Shown piece by piece: positions 1,762 through 62,064 of a DNA stretch of 64,000 nt. Below the pieces are notes generated by a model, which saw only the letters and a list, made by a program, of their open reading frames with translations, was not told the DNA's origin and searched no databases. Within the stretch, counting starts at the first letter, position 1. Each line of letters begins with the position of its first letter. The stretch is from NCBI GenBank assembly GCA_044892505.1, contig CM097882.1, forward strand, positions 34,906,001 to 34,970,000, given 5' to 3'. The position numbers and the translations under genes were made by a program. Origin of the DNA: Schmidtea nova (lineage: Eukaryota).

Positions 1762-1783
1762 TAGTTAATTTAATTTATTTTAG
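1762..1783 (+). promoter_or_regulatory. 3' splice acceptor region (representative; present in every unit)
   Basis: tagttaatttaatttattttAG|CC has a T-rich tract, TTAAT branch-point-like motifs and a terminal AG. An in-frame TAA lies just upstream at 1771-1773. Confidence 0.72.
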
Positions 1784-2053
1784 CCAACCTAACATATACT
1801 GTTACTATTACTCCTCAGTCAAGTACTCTAAGCTTTCTAGAAAATGATTCGATAGAATGCCAAATCGTACCGGTGCCTAATACAAACACCAGTCAAATCG
1901 CCTTTTTCTTGACGAATATAAAATCAGACTATTATTTTAGAAACGATCTGATTATTCATATCAAGCCTAAAAAAGAATTGGTAAATACTCCTATTTGTGC
2001 TGTTTGTGGTAATATAGCAAACATGAACGCTACTCAATGCTATACTTTGATAG
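1784..2053 (+). CDS. Exon copy 1: 90-codon phase 1-1 putative Ig-like domain exon
   Basis: The stop-free frame 1774-2073 is tightly bracketed by AG (1782-1783) and GTGAGT (2054-2059). Hand count gives 91/270 G+C (34%) versus 18/100 in 1681-1780. Confidence 0.78.
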
Positions 2054-5000
2054 GTGAGTATGCATTGTTTTTTTGAAATTTATATATCTTTAATTATATC
2101 TCAAATACTTTTCAATTCATTATTTCACTCAACGTTCACTCAGTAAATTCGTTCAAGTCAGTCAGGTATTTCTAATTTCTTTTCCAACAAAGGAAAACGT
2201 ATTAGGTTGGACTAAAAATAATTGCCGTTTTTAAATATAAATTATAAAACTTTGTATCTCAGGTTAGAATATGTTTTGTCAATAGAAATAAAAATCATTC
2301 GAATCTACGCATTTTGCAAACAAGAAACAAGTTTACTTATTTCTTTAGCATAAAATTCTTGAGTTCTGGAATCAATGAATTCTTCGAAGGCTATTTTAGC
2401 TTCTGTTTGATTTTTTTCAAACATTCTCTTGTATGAAGAGTTCGATATGCTTGCAAAATTTGTTAGTCAGTTTTTGAGAGCTCTACTAAGAGAGCTGAAG
2501 AGGTAGAGTTTTGAAGCCCAGTTCGTTCAATTTCTGAAGAGTCACTTTTGCCACATGCGGTCGAGCGTTGTCATAGAGAAGTATCGGTCATTTTCCATTG
2601 ACTAATGATTGAAGTAAACGCTGAAATTCTTGGTGTATTTTGTCAATTTCATGGCAATGTACTTCGTTGCTGTTATAATTTCGTCAGAATCAAAGTAGTT
2701 GTGGAATATTAATCATCTTGCTGACCACCAAACATTGACCATAACCTTATATTGATGAAGATTTTGTAGTGGGAAAGGTTTTGGAGCATTATCTACGCTG
2801 AGTCTCTGCAAGGAACGACGACCCTTGTCGCAGAGAATCGATGTTTCGTCACATGTCACACTACGAAAGAGAAATTATTGGTTTTGTTGCGCAAAAGACC
2901 AGAGCAGACTTCTTAACGACAAAACCTTTGATTTTCGAATAATTCGTGCGACACCCATTCGTCGAACTTTTTCGATTTTCCAATTTAATGTTAATGTCGA
3001 AAAATTATTAAATGACACACGTTCAGTTCTTATGAATGTTCTCGAGTTGTTTTGCGTAAGTCTGCTTCAATAATTTCCATCAATAAGTCGCCCACTATCG
3101 CAAAAGGACGTCTGCAATCTCAATATCTATCAAGGCTCTCATCTTTACTACGACATCTTTGGATCAAATGCCGAGCTGTACGTTCATTGATCGACTCCTG
3201 GCTAAATGCTTGGATGATATTGCGAGAGGTTTCAGATGCATTATGGCCTAGTTTAAACTCTTACAATAAAATCGATCGAATTTGCACTTTTCTGTCTTTA
3301 ATTAAAATAGAAAATATTTAACAAAAAATTTAATATATATAAAAAGAGGATTTTTAAATAAATAATCATATTAATATAATAACATTGATAAGAAAATAGG
3401 GTGTCAAAGTGAAAACGAATAAAAACGGTATTTATTTTTGTCCAACTTAATACTTTGCTATTATTCTTTACTTTCATTATAATTGTCAATCCTATCATAT
3501 TATTCTTGAATTTTTGAAAAACGTATCATTTAATGTCTTGTATTATTCATAAATATTAATGTGTAAAAATGTAATACTAATTCCATTCAATAAAGTACAG
3601 AATTAAATAGAGTCTTTGTAACTCATGAGGTTGGTTTATGATAATTTGTATTAAAGAAAAAACGTTGTTAAACACAATTATAAATTATATAGCATTCGAC
3701 AGTAATTGTCTTTTGTGAATATATTTTGACAATATATTATTTTTATAGCCTTTTAGTAATTATAAAACAAACGTAGAAATTATTTACTAGATTTTAAATT
3801 GTAATATAAAATCCAGTATATTTGGTTTTGAAAATAATAACATATTTAAACAATAATCACAATCTTGGAATATTAATTCGCTTATTCGTTATAAATACTT
3901 TTTTAGACTATTGTCTTAATTTTAAACAGTATGATTTGATTGTATATATTCTATCAAGTTAAATTGATTTATTTGAATAATAATAAATTTAAATATTATT
4001 CCAACTTGAAAATCATGTATGTACGTTTGCCTATCTAGTAAAACATACAAACTTATAATGTAATGCTCACTTGAAAGTGAAGTTGATCGTGCTAAATAAT
4101 GATATCTTAATTTTTGTTGCAATAGAAAAAATCAAATGATTTATTTATCTTATTGAAATTTTGACAGAAAATTGATCGCGCAAAAATGATACATTACATT
4201 TGCCGTTTCAAAATCTTTTCAAATATATTTGCTTTGCTACTTATAATTAATTATATTTAGTTAGTTAATTTAATTTATTTTAGCCAACCTAACATATACT
4301 GTTACTATTACTCCTCAGTCAAGTACTCTAAGCTTTCTAGAAAATGATTCGATAGAATGCCAAATCGTACCGGTGCCTAATACAAACACCAGTCAAATCG
4401 CCTTTTTCTTGACGAATATAAAATCAGACTATTATTTTAGAAACGATCTGATTATTCATATCAAGCCTAAAAAAGAATTGGTAAATACTCCTATTTGTGC
4501 TGTTTGTGGTAATATAGCAAACATGAACGCTACTCAATGCTATACTTTGATAGGTGAGTATGCATTGTTTTTTTGAAATTTATATATCTTTAATTATATC
4601 TCAAATACTTTTCAATTCATTATTTCACTCAACGTTCACTCAGTAAATTCGTTCAAGTCAGTCAGGTATTTCTAATTTCTTTTCCAACAAAGGAAAACGT
4701 ATTAGGTTGGACTAAAAATAATTGCCGTTTTTAAATATAAATTATAAAACTTTGTATCTCAGGTTAGAATATGTTTTGTCAATAGAAATAAAAATCATTC
4801 GAATCTACGCATTTTGCAAACAAGAAACAAGTTTACTTATTTCTTTAGCATAAAATTCTTGAGTTCTGGAATCAATGAATTCTTCGAAGGCTATTTTAGC
4901 TTCTGTTTGATTTTTTTCAAACATTCTCTTGTATGAAGAGTTCGATATGCTTGCAAAATTTGTTAGTCAGTTTTTGAGAGCTCTACTAAGAGAGCTGAAG

Positions 5001-8000
5001 AGGTAGAGTTTTGAAGCCCAGTTCGTTCAATTTCTGAAGAGTCACTTTTGCCACATGCGGTCGAGCGTTGTCATAGAGAAGTATCGGTCATTTTCCATTG
5101 ACTAATGATTGAAGTAAACGCTGAAATTCTTGGTGTATTTTGTCAATTTCATGGCAATGTACTTCGTTGCTGTTATAATTTCGTCAGAATCAAAGTAGTT
5201 GTGGAATATTAATCATCTTGCTGACCACCAAACATTGACCATAACCTTATATTGATGAAGATTTTGTAGTGGGAAAGGTTTTGGAGCTTTATCTACGCTG
5301 AGTCTCTGCAAGGAACGACGACCCTTGTCGCAGAGAATCGATGTTTCGTCACATGTCACACTACGAAAGAGAAATTATTGGTTTTGTTGCGCAAAAGACC
5401 AGAGCAGACTTCTTAACGACAAAACCTTTGATTTTCGAATAATTCGTGCGACACCCATTCGTCGAGCTTTTTCGATTTTCCAATTTAATGTTAATGTCGA
5501 AAAATTATTAAATGACACACGTTCAGTTCTTATGAATGTTCTCGAGTAGTTTTGCGTAAGTCTGCTTCAATAATTTCCATCAATAAGTCGCCCACTATCG
5601 CAAAAGGACGTCTGCAATCTCAATATCTATCAAGGCTCTCATCTTTACTACGACATCTTTGGATCAAATGCCGAGCTGTACGTTCATTGATCGACTCCTG
5701 GCTAAATGCTTGGATGATATTGCGAGAGGTTTCAGATGCATTATGGCCTAGTTTAAACTCTTACAATAAAATCGATCGAATTTGCACTTTTCTGTCTTTA
5801 ATTAAAATAGAAAATATTTAACAAAAAATTTAATATATATAAAAAGAGGATTTTTAAATAAATAATCATATTAATATAATAACATTGATAAGAAAATAGG
5901 GTGTCAAAGTGAAAACGAATAAAAACGGTATTTATTTTTGTCCAACTTAATACTTTGCTATTATTCTTTACTTTCATTATAATTGTCAATCCTATCATAT
6001 TATTCTTGAATTTTTGAAAAACGTATCATTTAATGTCTTGTATTATTCATAAAATATTAATGTGTAAAAATGTAATACTAATTCCATTCAATAAAGTACA
6101 GAATTAAATAGAGTCTTTGTAACTCATGAGGTTGGTTTATGATAATTTGTATTAAAGAAAAAACGTTGTTAAACACAATTATAAATTATATAGCATTCGA
6201 CAGTAATTGTCTTTCGTGAATATATTTTGACAATATATTATTTTTATAGCCTTTTAGTAATTATAAAACAAACGTAGAAATTATTTACTAGATTTTAAAT
6301 TGTAATATAAAATCCAGTATATTTGGTTTTGAAAATAATAACATATTTAAACAATAATCACAATCTTGGAATATTAATTCGCTTATTCGTTATAAATACT
6401 TTTTTAGACTATTGTCTTAATTTTAAACAGTATGATTTGATTGTATATATTCTATCAAGTTAAATTGATTTATTTGAATAATAATAAATTTAAATATTAT
6501 TCCAACTTGAAAATCATGTATGTACGTTTGCCTATCTAGTAAAACATACAAGCTTATAATGTAATGCTCACTTGGAAGTGAAGTTGATCGTGCTAAATAA
6601 TGATATCTTAATTTTTGTTGCAATAGAAAAAATCAAATGATTTATTTATCTTATTGAAATTTTGACAGAAAATTGATCGCGCAAAAATGATACATTACAT
6701 TTGCCGTTTCAAAATCTTTTCAAATATATTTGCTTTGCTACTTATAATTAATTATATTTAGTTAGTTAATTTAATTTATTTTAGCCAACCTAACATATAC
6801 TGTTACTATTACTCCTCAGTCAAGTACTCTAAGCTTTCTAGAAAATGATTCGATAGAATGCCAAATCGTACCGGTGCCTAATACAAACACCAGTCAAATC
6901 GCCTTTTTCTTGACGAATATAAAATCAGACTATTATTTTAGAAACGATCTGATTATTCATATCAAGCCTAAAAAAGAATTGGTAAATACTCCTATTTGTG
7001 CTGTTTGTGGTAATATAGCAAACATGAACGCTACTCAATGCTATACTTTGATAGGTGAGTATGCATTGTTTTTTTGAAATTTATATATCTTTAATTATAT
7101 CTCAAATACTTTTCAATTCATTATTTCACTCAACGTTCACTCAGTAAATTCGTTCAAGTCAGTCAGGTATTTCTAATTTCTTTTCCAACAAAGGAAAACG
7201 TATTAGGTTGGACTAAAAATAATTGCCGTTTTTAAATATAAATTATAAAACTTTGTATCTCAGGTTAGAATATGGTTTGTCAATAGAAATAAAAATCATT
7301 CGAATCTACGCATTTTGCAAACAAGAAACAAGTTTACTTATTTCTTTAGCATAAAATTCTTGAGTTCTGGAATCAATGAATTCTTCGAAGGCTATTTTAG
7401 CTTCTGTTTGATTTTTTTCAAACATTCTCTTGTATGAAGAGTTCGATATGCTTGCAAAATTTGTTAGTCAGTTTTTGAGAGCTCTACTAAGAGAGCTGAA
7501 GAGGTAGAGTTTTGAAGCCCAGTTCGTTCAATTTCTGAAGAGTCACTTTTGCCACATGCGGTCGAGCGTTGTCATAGAGAAGTATCGGTCATTTTCCATT
7601 GACTAATGATTGAAGTAAACGCTGAAATTCTTGGTGTATTTTGTCAATTTCATGGCAATGTACTTCGTTGCTGTTATAATTTCGTCAGAATCAAAGTAGT
7701 TGTGGAATATTAATCATCTTGCTGACCACCAAACATTGACCATAACCTTATATTGATGAAGATTTTGTAGTGGGAAAGGTTTTGGAGCTTTATCTACGCT
7801 GAGTCTCTGCAAGGAACGACGACCCTTGTCGCAGAGAATCGATGTTTCGTCACATGTCACACTACGAAAGAGAAATTATTGGTTTTGTTGCGCAAAAGAC
7901 CAGAGCAGACTTCTTAACGACAAAACCTTTGATTTTCGAATAATTCGTGCGACACCCATTCGTCGAGCTTTTTCGATTTTCCAATTTAATGTTAATGTCG

Positions 8001-11000
8001 AAAAATTATTAAATGACACACGTTCAGTTCTTATGAATGTTCTCGAGTAGTTTTGCGTAAGTCTGCTTCAATAATTTCCATCAATAAGTCGCCCACTATC
8101 GCAAAAGGACGTCTGCAATCTCAATATCTATCAAGGCTCTCATCTTTACTACGACATCTTTGGATCAAATGCCGAGCTGTACGTTCATTGATCGACTCCT
8201 GGCTAAATGCTTGGATGATATTGCGAGAGGTTTCAGATGCATTATGGCCTAGTTTAAACTCTTACAATAAAATCGATCGAATTTGCACTTTTCTGTCTTT
8301 AATTAAAATAGAAAATATTTAACAAAAAATTTAATATATATAAAAAGAGGATTTTTAAATAAATAATCATATTAATATAATAACATTGATAAGAAAATAG
8401 GGTGTCAAAGTGAAAACGAATAAAAACGGTATTTATTTTTGTCCAACTTAATACTTTGCTATTATTCTTTACTTTCATTATAATTGTCAATCCTATCATA
8501 TTATTCTTGAATTTTTGAAAAACGTATCATTTAATGTCTTGTATTATTCATAAAATATTAATGTGTAAAAATGTAATACTAATTCCATTCAATAAAGTAC
8601 AGAATTAAATAGAGTCTTTGTAACTCATGAGGTTGGTTTATGATAATTTGTATTAAAGAAAAAACGTTGTTAAACACAATTATAAATTATATAGCATTCG
8701 ACAGTAATTGTCTTTTGTGAATATATTTTGACAATATATTATTTTTATAGCCTTTTAGTAATTATAAAACAAACGTAGAAATTATTTACTAGATTTTAAA
8801 TTGTAATATAAAATCCAGTATATTTGGTTTTGAAAATAATAACATATTTAAACAATAATCACAATCTTGGAATATTAATTCGCTTATTCGTTATAAATAC
8901 TTTTTTAGACTATTGTCTTAATTTTAAACAGTATGATTTGATTGTATATATTCTATCAAGTTAAATTGATTTATTTGAATAATAATAAATTTAAATATTA
9001 TTCCAACTTGAAAATCATGTATGTACGTTTGCCTATCTAGTAAAACATACAAGCTTATAATGTAATGCTCACTTGAAAGTGAAGTTGATCGTGCTAAATA
9101 ATGATATCTTAATTTTTGTTGCAATAGAAAAAATCAAATGATTTATTTATCTTATTGAAATTTTGACAGAAAATTGATCGCGCAAAAATGATACATTACA
9201 TTTGCCGTTTCAAAATCTTTTCAAATATATTTGCTTTGCTACTTATAATTAATTATATTTAGTTAGTTAATTTAATTTATTTTAGCCAACCTAACATATA
9301 CTGTTACTATTACTCCTCAGTCAAGTACTCTAAGCTTTCTAGAAAATGATTCGATAGAATGCCAAATCGTACCGGTGCCTAATACAAACACCAGTCAAAT
9401 CGCCTTTTTCTTGACGAATATAAAATCAGACTATTATTTTAGAAACGATCTGATTATTCATATCAAGCCTAAAAAAGAATTGGTAAATACTCCTATTTGT
9501 GCTGTTTGTGGTAATATAGCAAACATGAACGCTACTCAATGCTATACTTTGATAGGTGAGTATGCATTGTTTTTTTGAAATTTATATATCTTTAATTATA
9601 TCTCAAATACTTTTCAATTCATTATTTCACTCAACGTTCACTCAGTAAATTCGTTCAAGTCAGTCAGGTATTTCTAATTTCTTTTCCAACAAAGGAAAAC
9701 GTATTAGGTTGGACTAAAAATAATTGCCGTTTTTAAATATAAATTATAAAACTTTGTATCTCAGGTTAGAATATGGTTTGTCAATAGAAATAAAAATCAT
9801 TCGAATCTACGCATTTTGCAAACAAGAAACAAGTTTACTTATTTCTTTAGCATAAAATTCTTGAGTTCTGGAATCAATGAATTCTTCGAAGGCTATTTTA
9901 GCTTCTGTTTGATTTTTTTCAAACATTCTCTTGTATGAAGAGTTCGATATGCTTGCAAAATTTGTTAGTCAGTTTTTGAGAGCTCTACTAAGAGAGCTGA
10001 AGAGGTAGAGTTTTGAAGCCCAGTTCGTTCAATTTCTGAAGAGTCACTTTTGCCACATGCGGTCGAGCGTTGTCATAGAAAAGTATCGGTCATTTTCCAT
10101 TGACTAATGATTGAAGTAAACGCTGAAATTCTTGGTGTATTTTGTCAATTTCATGGCAATGTACTTCGTTGCTGTTATAATTTCGTCAGAATCAAAGTAG
10201 TTGTGGAATATTAATCATCTTGCTGACCACCAAACATTGACCATAACCTTATATTGATGAAGATTTTGTAGTGGGAAAGGTTTTGGAGCTTTATCTACGC
10301 TGAGTCTCTGCAAGGAACGACGACCCTTGTCGCAGAGAATCGATGTTTCGTCACATGTCACACTACGAAAGAGAAATTATTGGTTTTGTTGCGCAAAAGA
10401 CCAGAGCAGACTTCTTAACGACAAAACCTTTGATTTTCGAATAATTCGTGCGACACCCATTCGTCGAGCTTTTTCGATTTTCCAATTTAATGTTAATGTC
10501 GAAAAATTATTAAATGACACACGTTCAGTTCTTATGAATGTTCTCGAGTAGTTTTGCGTAAGTCTGCTTCAATAATTTCCATCAATAAGTCGCCCACTAT
10601 CGCAAAAGGACGTCTGCAATCTCAATATCTATCAAGGCTCTCATCTTTACTACGACATCTTTGGATCAAATGCCGAGCTGTACGTTCATTGATCGACTCC
10701 TGGCTAAATGCTTGGATGATATTGCGAGAGGTTTCAGATGCATTATGGCCTAGTTTAAACTCTTACAATAAAATCGATCGAATTTGCACTTTTCTGTCTT
10801 TAATTAAAATAGAAAATATTTAACAAAAAATTTAATATATATAAAAAGAGGATTTTTAAATAAATAATCATATTAATATAATAACATTGATAAGAAAATA
10901 GGGTGTCAAAGTGAAAACGAATAAAAACGGTATTTATTTTTGTCCAACTTAATACTTTGCTATTATTCTTTACTTTCATTATAATTGTCAATCCTATCAT

Positions 11001-50000: not shown

Positions 50001-53000
50001 CTGAAGAGGTAGACTTTTGAAGCCCAGTTCGTTCAATTTCTGAAGAGTCACTTTTGCCACATGCGGTCGAGTGTTGTCATAGAGAAGTATCGGTCATTTT
50101 CGATTGACTAATGATTGAAGTAAACGCTGAAATTCTTGGTGTATTTTGTCAATTTCATGGCAATGTACTTCGTTGCTGTTATAATTTCGTCAGAATCAAA
50201 GTAGTTGTGGAATATTAATCATCTTGCTGACCACCAAACATTGACCATAACCTTATATTGATGAAGATTTTGTAGTGGGAAAGGTTTTAGAGCTTTATCT
50301 ACGCTGAGTCTCTGCAAGGAACGACGACCCTTGTCGCAGAGAATCGATGTTTCGTCACATGTCACACTACGAAAGAGAAATTATTGGTTTTGTTGCGCAA
50401 AAGACCAGAGCAGACTTCTTAACGACGAAACCTTTGATTTTCGAATAATTCGTTCGACACCCATTCGTCGAGCTTTTTCGATTTTCCAATTTAATGTTAA
50501 TGTCGAAAAATTATTAAATGACACACGTTCAGTTCTTATGAATGTTCTCGAGTTGTTTTGCGTAAGTCTGCTTCAATAATTTCCATCAATAAGTCGCCCA
50601 CTATCGCAAAAGGACGTCTGCAATCTCAATATCTATCAAGGCTCTCATCTTTACTACGACATCTTTGGATCAAATGCCGAGCTGTACGTTCATTGATCGA
50701 CTCCTGGCTAAATGCTTGGAATATATTGTGAGAGGTTTCAGATGCATTATGGCCTAGTTTAAACTCTTACAATAAAATCGATCGAATTTGCACTTTTCTG
50801 TCTTTAATTAAAATAGAAAATATTTAACAAAAAATTTAATATATATAAAAAGAGGATTTTTAAATAAATAATCATATTAATATAATAACATTGATAAAAA
50901 AATAGGGTGTCAAAGTGAAAACGAATAAAAACGGTATTTATTTTTGTCCAACTTAATACTTTGCTATTATTCTTTACTTTCATTATAATTGTCAATCCTA
51001 TCATATTATTCTTGAATTTTTGAAAAACGTATCATTTAATGTCTTGTATTATTCATAAAATATTAATGTGTAAAAATGTAATACTAATTCCATTCAATAA
51101 AGTACAGAATTAAATAGAGTCTTTGTAACTCATGAGGTTGGTTTATGATAATTTGTATTAAAGAAAAAACGTTGTTAAACACAATTATAAATTATATAGC
51201 ATTCGACAGTAATTGTCTTTCGTGAATATATTTTGACAATATATTATTTTTATAGCCTTTTAGTAATTATAAAACAAACGTAGAAATTATTTACTAGATT
51301 TTAAATTGTAATATAAAATCCAGTATATTTGGTTTTGAAAATAATAACATATTTAAACAATAATCACAATCTTGGAATATTAATTCGCTTATTCGTTATA
51401 AATACTTTTTTAGACTATTGTCTTAATTTTAAACAGTATGATTTGATTGTATATATTCTATCAAGTTAAATTGATTTATTTGAATAATAATAAATTTAAA
51501 TATTATTCCAACTTGAAAATCATGTATGTACGTTTGCCTATCTAGTAAAACATACAAGCTTATAATGTAATGCTCACTTTAAAGTGAAGTTGATTGTGCT
51601 AAATAATGATATCTTAATTTTTGTTGCAATAGAAAAAATCAAATGATTTATTTATCTTATTGAAATTTTGACAGAAAATTGATCGCGCAAAAATGATACA
51701 TTACATTTGCCGTTTCAAAATCTTTTCAAATATATTTGCTTTGCTACTTATAATTAATTATATTTAGTTAGTTAATTTAATTTATTTTAGCCAACCTAAC
51801 ATATACTGTTACTATTACTCCTCAGTCAAGTACTCTAAGCTTTCTAGAAAATGATTCGATAGAATGCCAAATCGTACCGGTGCCTAATACAAACACCAGT
51901 CAAATCGCCTTTTTCTTGACGAATATAAAATCAGACTATTATTTTAGAAACGATCTGATTATTCATATCAAGCCTAAAAAAGAATTGGTAAATACTCCTA
52001 TTTGTGCTGTTTGTGGTAATATAGCAAACATGAACGCTACTCAATGCTATACTTTGATAGGTGAGTATGCATTGTTTTTTTGAAATTTATATATCTTTAA
52101 TTATATCTCAAATACTTTTCAATTCATTATTTCACTCAACGTTCACTCAGTAAATTCGTTCAAGTCAGTCAGGTATTTCTAATTTCTTTTCCAACAAAGG
52201 AAAACGTATTAGGTTGGACTAAAAATAATTGCCGTTTTTAAATATAAATTATTAAACTTTGTATCTCAGGTTAGAATATGGTTTGTCAATAGAAATAAAA
52301 ATCATTCGAATCTACGCATTTTGCAAACAAGAAACAAGTTTACTTATTTCTTTAGCATAAAATTCTTGAGTTCTGGAATCAATGAATTCTTCGAAGGCTA
52401 TTTTAGCTTCTGTTTGATTTTTTTCAAACATTCTCTTGTATGAAGAGTTCGATATGCTTGCAAAATTTGTTAGTCAGTTTTGGAGAGCTCTACTAAGAGA
52501 GCTGAAGAGGTAGACTTTTGAAGCCCAGTTCGTTCAATTTCTGAAGAGTCACTTTTGCCACATGCGGTCGAGTGTTGTCATAGAGAAGTATCGGTCATTT
52601 TCGATTGACTAAGGATTGAAGTAAACGCTGAAATTCTTGGTGTATTTTGTCAATTTCATGGCAATGTACTTCGTTGCTGTTATAATTTCGTCAGAATCAA
52701 AGTAGTTGTGGAATATTAATCATCTTGCTGACCACCAAACATTGACCATAACCTTATATTGATGAAGATTTTGTAGTGGGAAAGGTTTTAGAGCTTTATC
52801 TACGCTGAGTCTCTGCAAGGAACGACGACCCTTGTCGCAGAGAATCGATGTTTCGTCACATGTCACACTACGAAAGAGAAATTATTGGTTTTGTTGCGCA
52901 AAAGACCAGAGCAGACTTCTTAACGACGAAACCTTTGATTTTCGAATAATTCGTGCGACACCCATTCGTCGAGCTTTTTCGATTTTCCAATTTAATGTTA

Positions 53001-56000
53001 ATGTCGAAAAATTATTAAATGACACACGTTCAGTTCTTATGAATGTTCTCGAGTTGTTTTGCGTAAGTCTGCTTCAATAATTTCCATCAATAAGTCGCCC
53101 ACTATCGCAAAAGGACGTCTGCAATCTCAATATCTATCAAGGCTCTCATCTTTACTACGACATCTTTGGATCAAATGCCGAGCTGTACGTTCATTGATCG
53201 ACTCCTGGCTAAATGCTTGGAATATATTGTGAGAGGTTTCAGATGCATTATGGCCTAGTTTAAACTCTTACAATAAAATCGATCGAATTTGCACTTTTCT
53301 GTCTTTAATTAAAATAGAAAATATTTAACAAAAAATTTAATATATATAAAAAGAGGATTTTTAAATAAATAATCATATTAATATAATAACATTGATAAAA
53401 AAATAGGGTGTCAAAGTGAAAACGAATAAAAACGGTATTTATTTTTGTCCAACTTAATACTTTGCTATTATTCTTTACTTTCATTATAATTGTCAATCCT
53501 ATCATATTATTCTTGAATTTTTGAAAAACGTATCATTTAATGTCTTGTATTATTCATAAAATATTAATGTGTAAAAATGTAATACTAATTCCATTCAATA
53601 AAGTACAGAATTAAATAGAGTCTTTGTAACTCATGAGGTTGGTTTATGATAATTTGTATTAAAGAAAAAACGTTGTTAAACACAATTATAAATTATATAG
53701 CATTCGACAGTAATTGTCTTTCGTGAATATATTTTGACAATATATTATTTTTATAGCCTTTTAGTAATTATAAAACAAACGTAGAAATTATTTACTAGAT
53801 TTTAAATTGTAATATAAAATCCAGTATATTTGGTTTTGAAAATAATAACATATTTAAACAATAATCACAATCTTGGAATATTAATTCGCTTATTCGTTAT
53901 AAATACTTTTTTAGACTATTGTCTTAATTTTAAACAGTATGATTTGATTGTATATATTCTATCAAGTTAAATTGATTTATTTGAATAATAATAAATTTAA
54001 ATATTATTCCAACTTGAAAATCATGTATGTACGTTTGCCTATCTAGTAAAACATACAAGCTTATAATGTAATGCTCACTTTAAAGTGAAGTTGATTGTGC
54101 TAAATAATGATATCTTAATTTTTGTTGCAATAGAAAAAATCAAATGATTTATTTATCTTATTGAAATTTTGACAGAAAATTGATCGCGCAAAAATGATAC
54201 ATTACATTTGCCGTTTCAAAATCTTTTCAAATATATTTGCTTTGCTACTTATAATTAATTATATTTAGTTAGTTAATTTAATTTATTTTAGCCAACCTAA
54301 CATATACTGTTACTATTACTCCTCAGTCAAGTACTCTAAGCTTTCTAGAAAATGATTCGATAGAATGCCAAATCGTACCGGTGCCTAATACAAACACCAG
54401 TCAAATCGCCTTTTTCTTGACGAATATAAAATCAGACTATTATTTTAGAAACGATCTGATTATTCATATCAAGCCTAAAAAAGAATTGGTAAATACTCCT
54501 ATTTGTGCTGTTTGTGGTAATATAGCAAACATGAACGCTACTCAATGCTATACTTTGATAGGTGAGTATGCATTGTTTTTTTGAAATTTATATATCTTTA
54601 ATTATATCTTAAATACTTTTCAATTCATTATTTCACTCAACGTTCACTCAGTAAATTCGTTCAAGTCAGTCAGGTATTTCTAATTTCTTTTCCAACAAAG
54701 GAAAACGTATTAGGTTGGACTAAAAATAATTGCCGTTTTTAAATATAAATTATAAAACTTTGTATCTCAGGTTAGAATATGGTTTGTCAATAGAAATAAA
54801 AATCATTCGAATCTACGCATTTTGCAAACAAGAAACAAGTTTACTTATTTCTTTAGCATAAAATTCTTGAGTTCTGGAATCAATGAATTCTTCGAAGGCT
54901 ATTTTAGCTTCTGTTTGATTTTTTTCAAACATTCTCTTGTATGAAGAGTTCGATATGCTTGCAAAATTTGTTAGTCAGTTTTGGAGAGCTCTACTAAGAG
55001 AGCTGAAGAGGTAGACTTTTGAAGCCCAGTTCGTTCAATTTCTGAAGAGTCACTTTTGCCACATGCGGTCGAGTGTTGTCATAGAGAAGTATCGGTCATT
55101 TTCGATTGACTAATGATTGAAGTAAACGCTGAAATTCTTGGTGTATTTTGTCAATTTCATGGCAATGTACTTCGTTGCTGTTATAATTTCGTCAGAATCA
55201 AAGTAGTTGTGGAATATTAATCATCTTGCTGACCACCAAACATTGACCATAACCTTATATTGATGAAGATTTTGTAGTGGGAAAGGTTTTAGAGCTTTAT
55301 CTACGCTGAGTCTCTGCAAGGAACGACGACCCTTGTCGCAGAGAATCGATGTTTCGTCACATGTCACACTACGAAAGAGAAATTATTGGTTTTGTTGCGC
55401 AAAAGACCAGAGCAGACTTCTTAACGACGAAACCTTTGATTTTCGAATAATTCGTGCGACACCCATTCGTCGAGCTTTTTCGATTTTCCAATTTAATGTT
55501 AATGTCGAAAAATTATTAAATGACACACGTTCAGTTCTTATGAATGTTCTCGAGTTGTTTTGCGTAAGTCTGCTTCAATAATTTCCATCAATAAGTCGCC
55601 CACTATCGCAAAAGGACGTCTGCAATCTCAATATCTATCAAGGCTCTCATCTTTACTACGACATCTTTGGATCAAATGCCGAGCTGTACGTTCATTGATC
55701 GACTCCTGGCTAAATGCTTGGAATATATTGTGAGAGGTTTCAGATGCATTATGGCCTAGTTTAAACTCTTACAATAAAATCGATCGAATTTGCACTTTTC
55801 TGTCTTTAATTAAAATAGAAAATATTTAACAAAAAATTTAATATATATAAAAAGAGGATTTTTAAATAAATAATCATATTAATATAATAACATTGATAAA
55901 AAAATAGGGTGTCAAAGTGAAAACGAATAAAAACGGTATTTATTTTTGTCCAACTTAATACTTTGCTATTATTCTTTACTTTCATTATAATTGTCAATCC

Positions 56001-59000
56001 TATCATATTATTCTTGAATTTTTGAAAAACGTATCATTTAATGTCTTGTATTATTCATAAAATATTAATGTGTAAAAATGTAATACTAATTCCATTCAAT
56101 AAAGTACAGAATTAAATAGAGTCTTTGTAACTCATGAGGTTGGTTTATGATAATTTGTATTAAAGAAAAAACGTTGTTAAACACAATTATAAATTATATA
56201 GCATTCGACAGTAATTGTCTTTCGTGAATATATTTTGACAATATATTATTTTTATAGCCTTTTAGTAATTATAAAACAAACGTAGAAATTATTTACTAGA
56301 TTTTAAATTGTAATATAAAATCCAGTATATTTGGTTTTGAAAATAATAACATATTTAAACAATAATCACAATCTTGGAATATTAATTCGCTTATTCGTTA
56401 TAAATACTTTTTTAGACTATTGTCTTAATTTTAAACAGTATGATTTGATTGTATATATTCTATCAAGTTAAATTGATTTATTTGAATAATAATAAATTTA
56501 AATATTATTCCAACTTGAAAATCATGTATGTACGTTTGCCTATCTAGTAAAACATACAAGCTTATAATGTAATGCTCACTTTAAAGTGAAGTTGATTGTG
56601 CTAAATAATGATATCTTAATTTTTGTTGCAATAGAAAAAATCAAATGATTTATTTATCTTATTGAAATTTTGACAGAAAATTGATCGCGCAAAAATGATA
56701 CATTACATTTGCCGTTTCAAAATCTTTTCAAATATATTTGCTTTGCTACTTATAATTAATTATATTTAGTTAGTTAATTTAATTTATTTTAGCCAACCTA
56801 ACATATACTGTTACTATTACTCCTCAGTCAAGTACTCTAAGCTTTCTAGAAAATGATTCGATAGAATGCCAAATCGTACCGGTGCCTAATACAAACACCA
56901 GTCAAATCGCCTTTTTCTTGACGAATATAAAATCAGACTATTATTTTAGAAACGATCTGATTATTCATATCAAGCCTAAAAAAGAATTGGTAAATACTCC
57001 TATTTGTGCTGTTTGTGGTAATATAGCAAACATGAACGCTACTCAATGCTATACTTTGATAGGTGAGTATGCATTGTTTTTTTGAAATTTATATATCTTT
57101 AATTATATCTTAAATACTTTTCAATTCATTATTTCACTCAACGTTCACTCAGTAAATTCGTTCAAGTCAGTCAGGTATTTCTAATTTCTTTTCCAACAAA
57201 GGAAAACGTATTAGGTTGGACTAAAAATAATTGCCGTTTTTAAATATAAATTATAAAACTTTGTATCTCAGGTTAGAATATGGTTTGTCAATAGAAATAA
57301 AAATCATTCGAATCTACGCATTTTGCAAACAAGAAACAAGTTTACTTATTTCTTTAGCATAAAATTCTTGAGTTCTGGAATCAATGAATTCTTCGAAGGC
57401 TATTTTAGCTTCTGTTTGATTTTTTTCAAACATTCTCTTGTATGAAGAGTTCGATATGCTTGCAAAATTTGTTAGTCAGTTTTGGAGAGCTCTAGACAGA
57501 GAGCTGAAGAGGTAGACTTTTGAAGCCCAGTTCGTTCAATTTCTGAAGAGTCACTTTTGCCACATGCGGTCGAGTGTTGTCATAGAGAAGTATCGGTCAT
57601 TTTCGATTGACTAATGATTGAAGTAAACGCTGAAATTCTTGGTGTATTTTGTCAATTTCATGGCAATGTACTTCGTTGCTGTTATAATTTCGTCAGAATC
57701 AAAGTAGTTGTGGAATATTAATCATCTTGCTGACCACCAAACATTGACCATAACCTTATATTGATGAAGATTTTGTAGTGGGAAAGGTTTTAGAGCTTTA
57801 TCTACGCTGAGTCTCTGCAAGGAACGACGACCCTTGTCGCAGAGAATCGATGTTTCGTCACATGTCACACTACGAAAGAGAAATTATTGGTTTTGTTGCG
57901 CAAAAGACCAGAGCAGACTTCTTAACGACGAAACCTTTGATTTTCGAATAATTCGTGCGACACCCATTCGTCGAGCTTTTTCGATTTTCCAATTTAATGT
58001 TAATGTCGAAAAATTATTAAATGACACACGTTCAGTTCTTATGAATGTTCTCGAGTTGTTTTGCGTAAGTCTGCTTCAATAATTTCCATCAATAAGTCGC
58101 CCACTATCGCAAAAGGACGTCTGCAATCTCAATATCTATCAAGGCTCTCATCTTTACTACGACATCTTTGGATCAAATGCCGAGCTGTACGTTCATTGAT
58201 CGACTCCTGGCTAAATGCTTGGAATATATTGTGAGAGGTTTCAGATGCATTATGGCCTAGTTTAAACTCTTACAATAAAATCGATCGAATTTGCACTTTT
58301 CTGTCTTTAATTAAAATAGAAAATATTTAACAAAAAATTTAATATATATAAAAAGAGGATTTTTAAATAAATAATCATATTAATATAATAACATTGATAA
58401 AAAAATAGGGTGTCAAAGTGAAAACGAATAAAAACGGTATTTATTTTTGTCCAACTTAATACTTTGCTATTATTCTTTACTTTCATTATAATTGTCAATC
58501 CTATCATATTATTCTTGAATTTTTGAAAAACGTATCATTTAATGTCTTGTATTATTCATAAAATATTAATGTGTAAAAATGTAATACTAATTCCATTCAA
58601 TAAAGTACAGAATTAAATAGAGTCTTTGTAACTCATGAGGTTGGTTTATGATAATTTGTATTAAAGAAAAAACGTTGTTAAACACAATTATAAATTATAT
58701 AGCATTCAACAGTAATTGTCTTTCGTGAATATATTTTGACAATATATTATTTTTATAGCCTTTTAGTAATTATAAAACAAACGTAGAAATTATTTACTAG
58801 ATTTTAAATTGTAATATAAAATCCAGTATATTTGGTTTTGAAAATAATAACATATTTAAACAATAATCACAATCTTGGAATATTAATTCGCTTATTCGTT
58901 ATAAATACTTTTTTAGACTATTGTCTTAATTTTAAACAGTATGATTTGATTGTATATATTCTATCAAGTTAAATTGATTTATTTGAATAATAATAAATTT

Positions 59001-62000
59001 AAATATTATTCCAACTTGAAAATCATGTATGTACGTTTGCCTATCTAGTTAAACATACAAGCTTATAATGTAATGCTCACTTTAAAGTGAAGTTGATTGT
59101 GCTAAATAATGATATCTTAATTTTTGTTGCAATAGAAAAAATCAAATGATTTATTTATCTTATTGAAATTTTGACAGAAAATTGATCGCGCAAAAATGAT
59201 ACATTACATTTGCCGTTTCAAAATCTTTTCAAATATATTTGCTTTGCTACTTATAATTAATTATATTTAGTTAGTTAATTTAATTTATTTTAGCCAACCT
59301 AACATATACTGTTACTATTACTCCTCAGTCAAGTACTCTAAGCTTTCTAGAAAATGATTCGATAGAATGCCAAATCGTACCGGTGCCTAATACAAACACC
59401 AGTCAAATCGCCTTTTTCTTGACGAATATAAAATCAGACTATTATTTTAGAAACGATCTGATTATTCATATCAAGCCTAAAAAAGAATTGGTAAATACTC
59501 CTATTTGTGCTGTTTGTGGTAATATAGCAAACATGAACGCTACTCAATGCTATACTTTGATAGGTGAGTATGCATTGTTTTTTTGAAATTTATATATCTT
59601 TAATTATATCTCAAATACTTTTCAATTCATTATTTAACTCAACGTTCACTCAGTAAATTCGTTCAAGTCAGTCAGGTATTTCTAATTTCTTTTCCAACAA
59701 AGGAAAACGTATTAGGTTGGACTAAAAATAATTGCCGTTTTTAAATATAAATTATAAAACTTTGTATCTCAGGTTAGAATATGGTTTGTCAATAGAAATA
59801 AAAATCATTCGAATCTACGCATTTTGCAAACAAGAAACAAGTTTACTTATTTCTTTAGCATAAAATTCTTGAGTTCTGGAATCAATGAATTCTTCGAAGG
59901 CTATTTTAGCTTCTGTTTGATTTTTTTCAAACATTCTCTTGTATGAAGAGTTCGATATGCTTGCAAAATTTGTTAGTCAGTTTTGGAGAGCTCTAGACAG
60001 AGAGCTGAAGAGGTAGAGTTTTGAAGCCCAGTTCGTTCAATTTCTGAAGAGTCACTTTTGCCACATGCGGTCGAGTGTTGTCATAGAGAAGTATCGGTCA
60101 TTTTCGATTGACTAATGATTGAAGTAAACGCTGAAATTCTTGGTGTATTTTGTCAATTTCATGGCAATGTACTTCGTTGCTGTTATAATTTCGTCAGAAT
60201 CAAAGTAGTTGTGGAATATTAATCATCTTGCTGACCACCAAACATTGACCATAACCTTATATTGATGAAGATTTTGTAGTGGGAAAGGTTTTGGAGCTTT
60301 ATCTACGCTGAGTCTCTGCAAGGAACGACGACCCTTGTCGCAGAGAATCGATGTTTCGTCACATGTCACACTACGAAAGAGAAATTATTGGTTTTGTTGC
60401 GCAAAAGACCAGAGCAGACTTCCTAACGACGAAACCTTTGATTTTCGAATAATTCGTGCGACACCCATTCGTCGAGCTTTTTCGATTTTCCAATTTAATG
60501 TTAATGTCGAAAAATTGTTAAATGACACACGTTCAGTTCTTATGAATGTTCTCGAGTTGTTTTGCGTAAGTCTGCTTCAATAATTTCCATCAATAAGTCG
60601 CCCACTATCGCAAAAGGACGTCTGAAATCTCAATATCTATCAAGGCTCTCATCTTTACTACGACATCTTTGGATCAAATGCCGAGCTGTACGTTCATTGA
60701 TCGACTCCTGGCTAAATGCTTGGATGATATTGCGAGAGGTTTCAGATGCATTATGGCCTAGTTTAAACTCTTACAATAAAATCGATCGAATTTGCACTTT
60801 TCTGTCTTTAATTAAAATAGAAAATATTTAACAAAAAATTTAATATATATAAAAAGAGGATTTTTAAATAAATAATCATATTAATATAATAACATTGATA
60901 AGAAAATAGGGTGTCAAAGTGAAAACGAATAAAAACGGTATTTATTTTTGTCAAACTTAATACTTTGCTATTATTCTTTACTTTCATTATAATTGTCAAT
61001 CCTATCATTTTATTCTTGAATTTTTGAAAAACGTATCATTTAATGTCTTGTATTATTCATAAAATATTAATGTGTAAAAATGTAATACTAATTCCATTCA
61101 ATAAAGTACAGAATTAAATAGAGTCTTTGTAACTCATGAGGTTGGTTTATGATAATTTGTAATAAAGAAAAAACGTTGTTAAACACAATTATAAATTATA
61201 TAGCATTCAACAGTAATTGTCTTTCGTGAATATATTTTGACAATATATTATTTTTATAGCCTTTTAGTAATTATAAAACAAACGTAGAAATTATCTACTA
61301 GATTTTAAATTGTAATATAAAATCCAGTATATTTGGTTTTGAAAATAATAACATATTTAAACAATAATCACAATCTTGGAATATTAATTCGCTTATTCGT
61401 TATAAATACTTTTTTAGACTATTGTCTTAATTTTAAACAGTATGATTTGATTGTATATATTCTATTAAGTTAAATTGATTTATTTGAATAATAATAAATT
61501 TAAATATTATTCCAAATTGAAAATCATGTATGTACGTTTGCCTATCTAGTAAAACATACAAGCTTATAATGTAATGCTCACTTGAAAGTGAAGTTGATCG
61601 TGCTAAATAATGATATCTTAATTTTTGTTGCAATAGAAAAAATCAAATGATTTATTTATCTTATTGAAATTTTGACAGAAAATTGATCGCGCAAAAATGA
61701 TACATTACATTTGCCGTTTCAAAATCTTTTCAAATATATTTGCTTTGCTACTTATAATTAATTATATTTAGTTAGTTAATTTAATTTATTTTAGCCAACC
61801 TAACATATACTGTTACTATTACTCCTCAGTCAAGTACTCTAAGCTTTCTAGAAAATGATTCGATAGAATGCCAAATCGTACCGGTGCCTAATACAAACAC
61901 CAGTCAAATCGCCTTTTTCTTGACGAATATAAAATCAGACTATTATTTTAGAAACGATCTGATTATTCATATCAAGCCTAAAAAAGAATTGGTAAATACT

Positions 62001-62064
62001 CATATTTGTGCTGTTTGTGGTAATATAGCAAACATGAACGCTACTCAATGCTATACTTTGATAG
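1784..62064 (+). CDS. Putative spliced internal CDS: 25 tandem 270 bp phase 1-1 exons giving 25 x 90 aa (2,250 aa) of a poly-domain, probably Ig-like, extracellular protein; start and stop lie outside the window
   Basis: Every copy has an AG acceptor, 270 stop-free bases and a GTGAGT donor. Joining ATA G|CC AAC keeps the frame. Repeat translation: ANLTYTVTITPQSSTLSFLENDSIECQIVPVPNTNTSQIAFFLTNIKSDYYFRNDLIIHIKPKKELVNTPICAVCGNIANMNATQCYTLI. No transcript evidence is available. Confidence 0.7.
2051..2059 (+). promoter_or_regulatory. 5' splice donor (representative; present in every unit)
   Basis: TAG|GTGAGT matches the U2-type donor consensus AG|GTRAGT. Confidence 0.8.
2202..2229 (+). repeat. 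Mariner 3' TIR (representative; present in every unit)
   Basis: TA (2200-2201) precedes TTAGGTTGGACTAAAAATAATTGCCGTT, which resembles the Hsmar1 TIR TTAGGTTGGTGCAAAAGTAATTGCGGTT as I recall it. Confidence 0.93.
2279..3302 (-). pseudogene. Mariner DDD transposase pseudogene (representative; same lesions in all copies)
   Basis: Recognisable motifs: EFKLGHNASETSRNI; IIEADLRKTTRE; IGKSKKLDEWVSHEL (WVPHEL); VTCDE (first D); LHQYKVMVNVWWSA; ILLYDNARPH (second D); LQKLNELGFKTLP; AFEEFIDSRTQEFY; QKCVDSN. The probable start codon reads ATT, YSPDL is destroyed, and there are at least 8 in-frame stops plus several frameshifts. Confidence 0.95.
4284..4553 (+). CDS. Exon copy 2
   Basis: Same AG/GTGAGT boundaries, open frame. 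Confidence 0.75.
4702..5950 (-). mobile_element. Decayed mariner copy 2
   Basis: Copy of 2202-3450. Confidence 0.95.
6785..7054 (+). CDS. Exon copy 3
   Basis: Same boundaries, open frame. Confidence 0.75.
7203..8451 (-). mobile_element. Decayed mariner copy 3
   Basis: Copy of 2202-3450. Confidence 0.95.
9286..9555 (+). CDS. Exon copy 4
   Basis: Same boundaries, open frame. Confidence 0.75.
9704..10952 (-). mobile_element. Decayed mariner copy 4
   Basis: Copy of 2202-3450. Confidence 0.95.
11786..12055 (+). CDS. Exon copy 5
   Basis: Same boundaries, open frame. Confidence 0.75.
12204..13452 (-). mobile_element. Decayed mariner copy 5
   Basis: Copy of 2202-3450. Confidence 0.95.
14286..14555 (+). 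CDS. Exon copy 6
   Basis: Same boundaries, open frame. Confidence 0.75.
14704..15952 (-). mobile_element. Decayed mariner copy 6
   Basis: Copy of 2202-3450. Confidence 0.95.
16786..17055 (+). CDS. Exon copy 7
   Basis: Same boundaries, open frame. Confidence 0.75.
17204..18452 (-). mobile_element. Decayed mariner copy 7
   Basis: Copy of 2202-3450. Confidence 0.95.
19286..19555 (+). CDS. Exon copy 8
   Basis: Same boundaries, open frame. Confidence 0.75.
19704..20952 (-). mobile_element. Decayed mariner copy 8
   Basis: Copy of 2202-3450. Confidence 0.95.
21787..22056 (+). CDS. Exon copy 9
   Basis: Same boundaries, open frame. Confidence 0.75.
22205..23453 (-). mobile_element. Decayed mariner copy 9
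   Basis: Copy of 2202-3450. Confidence 0.95.
24288..24557 (+). CDS. Exon copy 10
   Basis: Same boundaries, open frame. Confidence 0.75.
24706..25954 (-). mobile_element. Decayed mariner copy 10
   Basis: Copy of 2202-3450. Confidence 0.95.
26789..27058 (+). CDS. Exon copy 11
   Basis: Same boundaries, open frame. Confidence 0.75.
27207..28455 (-). mobile_element. Decayed mariner copy 11
   Basis: Copy of 2202-3450. Confidence 0.95.
29290..29559 (+). CDS. Exon copy 12 (Q38R, N80K)
   Basis: Same boundaries, open frame; private A>G at 29401 and C>A at 29528. Confidence 0.75.
29708..30956 (-). mobile_element. Decayed mariner copy 12 (first copy of the right-hand lineage)
   Basis: Copy of 2202-3450 with diagnostic SNPs at 29981, 30072, 30102 and 30427. 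Confidence 0.95.
31789..32058 (+). CDS. Exon copy 13
   Basis: Same boundaries, open frame. Confidence 0.75.
32207..33455 (-). mobile_element. Decayed mariner copy 13
   Basis: Copy of 2202-3450. Confidence 0.95.
34288..34557 (+). CDS. Exon copy 14
   Basis: Same boundaries, open frame. Confidence 0.75.
34706..35954 (-). mobile_element. Decayed mariner copy 14
   Basis: Copy of 2202-3450. Confidence 0.95.
36787..37056 (+). CDS. Exon copy 15
   Basis: Same boundaries, open frame. Confidence 0.75.
37205..38453 (-). mobile_element. Decayed mariner copy 15
   Basis: Copy of 2202-3450. Confidence 0.95.
39286..39555 (+). CDS. Exon copy 16
   Basis: Same boundaries, open frame. Confidence 0.75.
39704..40952 (-). 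mobile_element. Decayed mariner copy 16
   Basis: Copy of 2202-3450. Confidence 0.95.
41787..42056 (+). CDS. Exon copy 17 (V7I, P70L)
   Basis: Same boundaries, open frame; G>A at 41804 and C>T at 41994. Confidence 0.75.
42205..43453 (-). mobile_element. Decayed mariner copy 17
   Basis: Copy of 2202-3450. Confidence 0.95.
44288..44557 (+). CDS. Exon copy 18 (V7I)
   Basis: Same boundaries, open frame. Confidence 0.75.
44706..45954 (-). mobile_element. Decayed mariner copy 18
   Basis: Copy of 2202-3450. Confidence 0.95.
46789..47058 (+). CDS. Exon copy 19 (V7I)
   Basis: Same boundaries, open frame. Confidence 0.75.
47207..48455 (-). mobile_element. Decayed mariner copy 19
   Basis: Copy of 2202-3450. 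Confidence 0.95.
49290..49559 (+). CDS. Exon copy 20 (V7I)
   Basis: Same boundaries, open frame. Confidence 0.75.
49708..50956 (-). mobile_element. Decayed mariner copy 20
   Basis: Copy of 2202-3450. Confidence 0.95.
51791..52060 (+). CDS. Exon copy 21
   Basis: Same boundaries, open frame. Confidence 0.75.
52209..53457 (-). mobile_element. Decayed mariner copy 21
   Basis: Copy of 2202-3450. Confidence 0.95.
54292..54561 (+). CDS. Exon copy 22
   Basis: Same boundaries, open frame. Confidence 0.75.
54710..55958 (-). mobile_element. Decayed mariner copy 22
   Basis: Copy of 2202-3450. Confidence 0.95.
56793..57062 (+). CDS. Exon copy 23
   Basis: Same boundaries, open frame. Confidence 0.75.
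57211..58459 (-). mobile_element. Decayed mariner copy 23
   Basis: Copy of 2202-3450. Confidence 0.95.
59294..59563 (+). CDS. Exon copy 24
   Basis: Same boundaries, open frame. Confidence 0.75.
59712..60960 (-). mobile_element. Decayed mariner copy 24 (divergent/mosaic)
   Basis: Copy of 2202-3450 with private SNPs, including C>A at 60953 inside the TIR. Confidence 0.95.
61795..62064 (+). CDS. Exon copy 25 (P70H)
   Basis: Same boundaries, open frame; C>A at 62002. Confidence 0.75.

What the first reader, a model, noticed from the sequence alone, without database searches (positions are those of the whole stretch)
1784..62064. Hidden giant gene: a symmetric 270 bp domain exon repeated at least 25 times inside what looks like satellite DNA
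Seen: each unit has a 100-codon stop-free frame (1774-2073). Inside it, a T-rich AG acceptor (1782-1783) and a consensus AG|GTGAGT donor delimit exactly 270 bp. The segment is 34% GC versus about 18% just upstream, and both ends are phase 1. Exon-to-exon splicing (ATA G|CC AAC) therefore gives an uninterrupted ORF of at least 2,250 aa. Established: phase 1-1 single-domain exons are typical of shuffled extracellular modules (Ig, FN3, EGF), and human LPA kringle IV type 2 is a known copy-number-variable array of near-identical exon+intron units. Inference: this is a comparable length-variable poly-domain surface or secreted protein that repeat masking would hide as mariner satellite.
Basis: partly seen in the sequence, partly recalled or inferred. 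Interest (0 to 1): 0.92.

Follow-up and report, generated by a model that had tools for sequence, protein, structure and literature searches.

The report
Repeated Ig-like exon array, flatworm
The whole window is about 25 near-identical 2.5-kb units, each holding one 270-base exon for an immunoglobulin-like domain plus an intron with a dead mariner transposon; it is probably the middle of a very long surface-protein gene, but no RNA data were available to show that it is expressed.

Summary
The 64-kb window is one head-to-tail array with a period of 2499-2501 bp. It holds 25 complete 270-bp segments. Each has an AG acceptor, a GTGAGT donor and phase 1 at both ends, and all are open in one frame (at least 2,250 aa if joined).

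The open frame alone is not beyond chance. The case for coding rests on other results:
- The 89-aa unit has three significant homologues. Two of them continue into a transmembrane helix and a short tail.
- A 62%-identical copy from another sample has the same exon borders. It sits in its own tandem array of about 1016 bp, and its introns cannot be aligned with ours.
- With a 4-sequence alignment AlphaFold gives pLDDT 81, and the model matches only Ig-like sandwiches.
- Four cysteines and one N-glycosylation site are conserved. Changes between the two arrays fall mainly in loops and are conservative.

Against: dN/dS is about 1.15, with no third-position excess. All five within-array exon variants change an amino acid. 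No RNA run exists, and neither array end could be reached.

Each intron carries the same degenerate mariner, so one unit spread through the array after that insertion.

Verdict: probably (about 0.6) a real gene with an LPA-KIV-2-like copy-variable exon array, encoding a new flatworm Ig-like domain. Earlier notes of this scan flag several similar exon-cassette arrays elsewhere in this genome.

The parts
1..64000 (+). Tandem array of about 25.6 units, period 2499-2501 bp, running off both ends of the window
   Evidence: Anchor spacing. Alignment of 24 units shows 66 variable columns of 2501. Neighbouring units are more alike than distant ones.
1784..2053 (+). Exon copy 1 (270 bp, phase 1-1; 89 codons at 1786-2052 plus a split codon); Ig-like domain
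   Evidence: AG at 1782-1783 and GTGAGT at 2054-2059. Homologues. Fold.
4284..4553 (+). Exon copy 2
   Evidence: identical to the reference copy
6785..7054 (+). Exon copy 3
9286..9555 (+). Exon copy 4
11786..12055 (+). Exon copy 5
14286..14555 (+). Exon copy 6
16786..17055 (+). Exon copy 7
19286..19555 (+). Exon copy 8
21787..22056 (+). Exon copy 9
24288..24557 (+). Exon copy 10
26789..27058 (+). Exon copy 11
29290..29559 (+). Exon copy 12 (variants Q37R and N79K)
31789..32058 (+). Exon copy 13
34288..34557 (+). Exon copy 14
36787..37056 (+). Exon copy 15
39286..39555 (+). Exon copy 16
41787..42056 (+). Exon copy 17 (variants V6I and P69L)
44288..44557 (+). Exon copy 18 (V6I)
46789..47058 (+). 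Exon copy 19 (V6I)
49290..49559 (+). Exon copy 20 (V6I)
51791..52060 (+). Exon copy 21
54292..54561 (+). Exon copy 22
56793..57062 (+). Exon copy 23
59294..59563 (+). Exon copy 24
61795..62064 (+). Exon copy 25 (P69H)
2054..4283 (+). Putative intron of unit 1 (2230 nt, GTGAGT...TTTTAG); the same intron recurs in every unit
   Evidence: splicing is inferred, not observed
2202..3450 (-). Degenerate mariner element (1249 bp) inside the intron, flanked by TA at 2200-2201 and 3451-3452; the same insertion recurs in every unit
   Evidence: Inverted terminal repeats 2214-2233 / 3420-3439. Pfam Transposase_1 PF01359, E 1.6e-7, on a minus-strand piece at 2716-2859. The transposase frame is broken into pieces of 75 aa or fewer.

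Best explanation
The window is the inside of a protein-coding gene whose middle part is an array of at least 25 near-identical exon-plus-intron cassettes. Each 270-bp exon encodes one 90-residue Ig-like beta-sandwich domain. The domain has four conserved cysteines and four N-glycosylation sequons. Both exon borders are phase 1, so any number of copies splices in frame. The predicted product is a long, glycosylated rod of tandem Ig-like domains in the secretory pathway. By analogy with its small relatives it probably ends in a transmembrane helix and a very short cytoplasmic tail. The array is kept uniform, and its length changed, by unequal crossing-over and gene conversion. One unit that had acquired a mariner in its intron has replaced all the others in view. 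Shown: the array, the splice signals, the phase, the homologues, the fold, a second diverged array, and the mariner history. Inferred: transcription, splicing of all copies, membrane anchoring and copy-number variation.
For: 1. All 25 of 25 copies have intact AG/GTGAGT borders and an open frame.
2. phmmer against 1.84 billion representatives finds three true relatives: P0001 (E 2e-26, 62% identity over all 89 aa), P0003 (4e-6) and P0004 (4e-5). C25, C71, C74, C85 and the sequon at residue 81 are conserved in all.
3. In L002 the homologous exon has the same borders. A 46-nt intron follows, then an exon that reads as a transmembrane helix, a 6-residue tail and a stop. P0004 has the same layout.
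4. In L001/L003 the 78%-identical exon keeps AG and GTAAGT at the same positions, with no indel. The end of L003 joins the end of L001 to its start, so that unit is also tandem, with a period of about 1016 bp.
5. Introns fall to the identity of shuffled sequence (57-59%) beyond about 50-70 nt from the exon.
6. Only 5-6% of simulated neutral histories with 58 substitutions keep the frame open.
7. The changes are clustered (chi-square p 0.003) and hit fewer codons than random (40 against 46, p 0.006). They give a higher BLOSUM62 sum than random (289 against 238+-20, p 0.003-0.009). They fall in loops (25 of 47) rather than strands (9 of 42; p 0.002).
8. AlphaFold2 with the 4-sequence alignment gives pLDDT 81 and pTM 0.72, with seven strands. 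The top structural matches are Ig-like domains such as Robo, nectin D3, VCAM, NCAM and Big_2, with Z up to 8.6.
9. Earlier notes of this scan report other exon-cassette arrays in the same genome.
Against: - No RNA run holds the sequence. The four available runs behave as DNA and show only the unspliced form.
- No spliced multi-copy protein turned up in a collection of about 15 billion proteins.
- dN/dS between the two arrays is 1.15, with 20/18/20 differences at codon positions 1/2/3.
- All five exon variants within the array change an amino acid. Variant density in the exon (4 of 270 columns) is not clearly below that of the intron (62 of 2231).
- A 100-codon open frame is not rare in this unit.
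- The array is so young (0.58% diversity) that intact copies say little about present-day selection.
- The two arrays could have been amplified independently from different exons of a parent gene. In that case the exon conservation would predate both arrays.
- Neither array end nor any flanking exon is in view.
Confidence: 0.6

Rival explanations
1. This is a non-expressed macrosatellite. A fragment of a gene (one Ig-like exon plus an intron with its mariner) was amplified recently. It is now neutral repeat DNA, and its frame is open only because too little time has passed for it to decay.
For: Units differ by only 0.58%. dN/dS is 1.15 with no third-position excess. All five exon variants change an amino acid. 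There is no RNA evidence and no spliced product in the protein collections. An open frame of this length is not rare here.
Against: A second array that is 22% diverged keeps the frame, both splice sites and the length, while its introns cannot be aligned. The substitution pattern follows the predicted fold and is conservative. A tandem duplication arising in place inside a gene with phase 1-1 borders stays in frame, so amplification by itself does not inactivate the gene.
Confidence: 0.3
2. This is a cluster of alternative, mutually exclusive exons (Dscam-like). Only one copy, or a few, is included in each transcript.
For: The exons lie in tandem, are equivalent and have symmetric phase, and each encodes an Ig-like module.
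Against: 19 of the 25 copies are identical and the others differ by one or two residues, so choosing among them would give almost no diversity. No selector or docking sequences were looked for.
Confidence: 0.05
3. This is an assembly artefact: a few copies inflated into a long array.
For: None directly. Near-identical repeats are hard to assemble.
Against: The units carry 39 shared variant columns arranged in blocks of neighbouring units, plus three length classes. Four independent DNA-type runs cover unit sequence at summed contig depths of about 50-340.
Confidence: 0.03

Closest known systems
Human LPA kringle IV type 2 array (5.6-kb copy-number-variable exon-intron repeat that generates more than 40 protein isoforms; PMC6314250)
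   Same: Near-identical tandem units lie inside a gene, each with coding exon and intron. The frame is preserved across units, so protein length follows copy number. Unequal crossing-over homogenises the array.
   Different: The unit here has one exon, not two, and is 2.5 kb, not 5.6 kb. The domain is Ig-like, not a kringle. Every intron carries a dead mariner. Expression and copy-number polymorphism are not shown here.
Ig-domain exon arrays of animal cell-surface and matrix proteins (for example titin, hemicentin, Robo/NCAM-type ectodomains), with one phase 1-1 exon per Ig domain (from general knowledge)
   Same: One domain per symmetric phase-1 exon. The fold is a seven-strand sandwich of about 90 residues. 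The cysteine spacing is of the B-strand/F-strand type.
   Different: No Pfam Ig model matches. The domain has no tryptophan. It has an extra cysteine pair (CxxC...C). The copies are 99-100% identical rather than diverged.
Giant repetitive secreted and adhesive proteins of flatworms (PMC9229212), and the other exon-cassette arrays noted in this genome
   Same: They occur in the same animal group, and partly in the same genome. They are very long proteins built from near-identical repeats that repeat masking would hide.
   Different: Those repeats are mostly disordered, or lie in single giant exons. Here each repeat is a folded, cysteine-bearing Ig-like domain on its own exon, and its relatives are membrane-anchored.
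Coding macrosatellites such as D4Z4/DUX4 (PMC2965761)
   Same: Kilobase-scale tandem units that carry coding sequence.
   Different: Each D4Z4 unit holds a whole intronless gene. Here each unit holds one internal exon that has meaning only if spliced to its neighbours.

Membership tests
Immunoglobulin-like beta-sandwich domain | A sandwich of about 7 strands and 80-110 residues | tested here: met
   The AF2 model has pLDDT 81 and seven strands. The best matches are nearly all Ig-like domains, with TM 0.5-0.65 and VIA Z up to 8.6. Z values of 7-8 are only moderate by the tool's own note.
Immunoglobulin-like beta-sandwich domain | Sequence match to a curated Ig family model (I-set, V-set, Ig_2/3, Big_2) | tested here: not met
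   At E up to 10, Pfam gives only DUF7494 (0.006) and DicB for the window domain, and no Ig model for any of the four proteins. There is no sequence hit in the PDB.
Immunoglobulin-like beta-sandwich domain | Cysteine pair on strands B and F, plus a core tryptophan on strand C | tested here: inconclusive
   C25 and C71/C74 are invariant and 46-49 residues apart, in predicted strands 22-28 and 69-76. The domain has no tryptophan. Disulfide geometry was not measured.
Intragenic copy-variable exon-intron cassette array (LPA KIV-2 type) | Near-identical tandem units, each with exon and intron | tested here: met
Intragenic copy-variable exon-intron cassette array (LPA KIV-2 type) | Reading frame preserved from unit to unit | tested here: met
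   270 = 3 x 90, phase 1 at both ends, and the concatenated frame is open
Intragenic copy-variable exon-intron cassette array (LPA KIV-2 type) | mRNA that contains many spliced copies | not testable with these tools
   No RNA run is on record. The runs that were laid on the window show only the unspliced form.
Intragenic copy-variable exon-intron cassette array (LPA KIV-2 type) | Unique flanking exons of the same gene at both ends | not testable with these tools
   The array runs off both ends of the window. Only loose ends hint at edges.
Intragenic copy-variable exon-intron cassette array (LPA KIV-2 type) | Copy number differs between individuals | not tested
   Contig depths cannot serve as copy numbers.
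Mariner (Tc1/mariner) transposon | Terminal inverted repeats, TA target duplication, DDE transposase | tested here: met
   ITRs. TA at both ends. PF01359 match above its cut-off. The transposase frame is broken, so the copy is dead.
Dscam-type mutually exclusive exon cluster | Alternative exons that differ in sequence | tested here: not met
   19 of 25 copies are identical and the rest differ at 1-2 residues.

The most novel reading that the evidence does not exclude
A lineage-restricted Ig-like domain family of flatworms, otherwise seen only as single domains next to a transmembrane anchor, has been expanded here into a surface protein of 25 or more identical domains. Its length would be set by a fast-evolving exon-cassette array. 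Arrays of this kind would then be a general way in which this genome builds giant genes that repeat masking hides.
Probability: 0.45. Interest if true: 0.6.

Novelty: new member of a known kind. Interest (0 to 1): 0.45.

Why it matters
If it is expressed, this is a clear non-vertebrate counterpart of the LPA KIV-2 array. It would be a folded extracellular domain multiplied by in-frame exon-intron cassettes, giving a protein whose length can change in one recombination step. It also dates homogenisation directly, because a mariner insertion in one intron now sits in every unit. Practically, it shows that 'satellite' or 'mariner repeat' masking in flatworm genomes can hide coding sequence, so gene sets for these animals probably miss large surface proteins. 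Even if the array is not expressed, the domain family it reveals (four members, no Pfam model) is new.

Tried and rejected
- Tandem Repeats Finder found nothing, because its longest period is 500. The period was obtained from anchor words instead.
- The weak Pfam hit to DUF7494 (E 0.006) was not repeated in any homologue and was dropped.
- P0002, a 1297-aa protein with 12 matched stretches, looked at first like a multi-domain relative. It is a bacterial-type zinc-ribbon repeat protein that shares only the ICAVCGN motif, so it was rejected as a chance match.
- AlphaFold on the single sequence failed (pLDDT 45).
- The ESM Atlas feature search gave nothing.
- A profile search of 5.8 billion clusters added no new member.
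- A JGI metagenome scan by protein pattern and another by a conserved 27-mer found nothing.
- A paper search for the sample accessions found nothing.
- Using within-array variation to test selection was uninformative, with only 4 variable exon columns.
- A multi-domain concatemer was not submitted to any search or fold, because it has no reference and would have needed long typed, repeated text.
Full report
**1. What is in the window.**
The whole 64,000 bases form one head-to-tail array. An anchor at the putative donor occurs 25 times, spaced 2499-2501 bp apart. Tandem Repeats Finder missed the array only because its longest period is 500.

Each unit holds a 270-bp segment preceded by AG and followed by GTGAGT. 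Nineteen of the 25 copies are identical. The others differ by one or two substitutions and none has a stop or an indel. The frame that starts at the third base of the segment is open for 89 codons, and a split codon bridges copy to copy. Any number of copies therefore joins in frame, at 90 residues per copy and at least 2,250 aa in the window.

An alignment of 24 full units has 66 variable columns out of 2501. Mean pairwise difference is 0.58%. Neighbouring units are more alike than distant ones, and there are three length classes. That pattern fits a real array evolving by local duplication and unequal exchange. It does not fit an assembly artefact.

**2. The rest of the unit.**
The 2230-nt spacer contains a 1249-bp mariner on the minus strand (2202-3450 in the first full unit).
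- It has terminal inverted repeats.
- TA flanks it on both sides.
- A piece matches Pfam Transposase_1 above the cut-off.
- Its transposase frame is broken into short pieces.

The same dead copy sits at the same place in every unit. The insertion therefore happened once, and that unit then replaced the others. Without the mariner the unit would be about 1250 bp.

**3. Is the open frame meaningful?**
On its own it is not. Shuffled units reach a stop-free run of 100 codons in 7.6% of trials. The real unit has two other runs of 101 and 104 codons antisense to the mariner. The 25 copies are also too alike to count as independent evidence.

**4. Homologues.**
A full phmmer scan of 1.84 billion representative proteins gave four hits.
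- **P0002** is a 1297-aa protein with about a dozen zinc-ribbon repeats. It shares only the motif ICAVCGN, and I reject it as unrelated.
- **P0001** is 62% identical over all 89 residues (E 2e-26).
- **P0003** is 34% identical (E 4e-6).
- **P0004** is 46% identical over the C-terminal half (E 4e-5).

The last three are true relatives. Four cysteines (25, 71, 74, 85) and the N-glycosylation sequon at 81 are conserved in all of them.

All three come from short contigs of environmental or unlabelled samples. They look like bacterial-style gene calls on AT-rich eukaryotic DNA that read through from exon into intron.

In L002 the homologous exon has an AG acceptor and a GT donor at the same domain borders. 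A 46-nt intron follows, and then an exon that encodes a hydrophobic helix, six more residues and a stop. P0004 shows the same order: domain, helix, short tail. The family is therefore extracellular and membrane-anchored, at least in its single-domain members.

No further member was found in 5.8 billion clusters, in JGI metagenomes or in the PDB. No Pfam Ig model matches.

**5. Fold.**
AlphaFold2 on the single sequence failed (pLDDT 45). With the four-sequence alignment it gave pLDDT 81 and pTM 0.72, with seven strands.

Foldseek against the PDB, an exhaustive VIA-align search and the ESM Atlas all returned Ig-like sandwiches. Examples are Robo, PTP-delta, nectin/Necl D3, VCAM, NCAM, MDGA1 and bacterial Big_2. 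TM-scores were 0.5-0.65 and Z reached 8.6.

By the tool's own note these scores are moderate. I therefore claim the fold class, not membership of a particular Ig family. The domain has four sequons (residues 1, 20, 34, 81).

**6. A second array.**
L001 (Logan contig) and L003 (ENA contig) carry the P0001 exon. AG and GTAAGT sit at exactly the same positions as in the window. The exon is also 270 bp, has no indel, and is 78% identical at the nucleotide level.

The last 23 bases of L003 run from the end of L001, through one extra T, into the start of L001. That unit is therefore also repeated head to tail, with a period of about 1016 bp and no mariner.

Outside the exon, similarity holds for only about 50-70 nt on each side (about 67%). 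Beyond that it drops to the level of shuffled AT-rich sequence (57-59%). The exon and its splice-proximal flanks are thus an island of conservation between two arrays.

**7. Tests of coding constraint between the two arrays.**
For constraint:
- Only 5-6% of simulated neutral histories with the observed 58 substitutions keep the frame open.
- The substitutions are clustered along the exon (chi-square p 0.003).
- They hit fewer codons than random (40 against 46.3, p 0.006).
- They give a higher BLOSUM62 sum than open-frame random histories (289 against 238+-20, p 0.003-0.009).
- They change 25 of 47 loop residues but only 9 of 42 strand residues (p 0.002 with the alignment-based model; p 0.05 with the strands of the independent single-sequence model).

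Against constraint:
- Nei-Gojobori dN/dS is 1.15, and the differences fall 20/18/20 on codon positions 1/2/3.
- All five exon variants inside the array change an amino acid: V6I, Q37R, P69L, P69H and N79K.

My reading is an inference. In an array of many identical domains, a replacement in one copy is nearly neutral and can spread by homogenisation. A stop, a frameshift or a lost splice site truncates the whole protein and is removed. That would give exactly this mix of free surface change with a preserved frame, length, cysteines and splice sites.

An alternative that I cannot exclude is that the two arrays were amplified separately from two different exons of a parent gene. The conservation would then predate both arrays.

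**8. Expression.**
No run on record as RNA holds the sequence. Four runs from one study hold it. Laid on bases 1-6000, they cover introns and exon alike, and one contig runs unbroken from 762 to 2372. There is no joint from 2053 to 4284, and Nextera adaptor appears at loose ends, so the runs behave as DNA.

No spliced multi-copy product appears in the protein collections. That means little if the species has no RNA data there.

**9. Context.**
Earlier notes of this scan place the window in a flatworm genome, on a piece of more than 480 Mb. They list several other arrays of in-frame exon cassettes and giant repeat genes in the same genome. I did not test those notes. They raise the prior that such arrays are a feature of this genome, but they are not independent support.

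**10. Verdict.**
The most likely explanation (about 0.6) is a real gene whose central part is a copy-variable array of Ig-like-domain exons. It would work like LPA KIV-2 and encode a long glycosylated surface protein.

The main rival (about 0.3) is a recently amplified gene fragment that is not expressed. A Dscam-like alternative-exon cluster and an assembly artefact are both unlikely.

The finding is a new member of a known kind of gene architecture, and it carries a domain family that has no curated model.

Noticed in passing
L003:1-33: The first 33 bases of this contig are GC-richer and are absent from L001. They abut the relative's unit about 160 nt upstream of its exon. If the GT at 32-33 is a donor, they read as ten mostly hydrophobic codons plus a split codon in phase 1. 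This could be an upstream exon at the array edge, or a chimera in a contig with 1.5x coverage.
   Followed up: partly
window 3831, 3996-4000, 4256, 4563 (loose ends): Contigs of runs X1-X4 leave the unit at these points and run into sequence that shares no 12-mer with the window. The one at 4563 puts a different, GC-richer sequence ending in ...AATAGGT just before the start of the common intron. These may be array edges or diverged edge units.
   Followed up: partly
P0002: A 1297-aa protein from a 72-kb ENA contig. It has an N-terminal membrane region, a proline/glutamine-rich repeat and about a dozen near-identical zinc-ribbon modules (…ICAVCGNVLNENSAFCTKCG…). It is unrelated to the finding but is a striking repeat protein.
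   Followed up: no
window 2202-3450 and every unit; tables 1 and 7: Many contigs in the four DNA runs match the mariner part at 95-99% identity and then run on into other sequence. This mariner family is therefore abundant and fairly young in the genome. Its terminal repeat resembles those of the cecropia/Hsmar1-like mariner group (from memory, not tested).
   Followed up: no
window 2759-3070 and 3016-3318, + strand: Two stop-free runs of 104 and 101 codons lie antisense to the dead mariner transposase. They have no splice-site or homology support and were used only as a control for chance open frames.
   Followed up: partly
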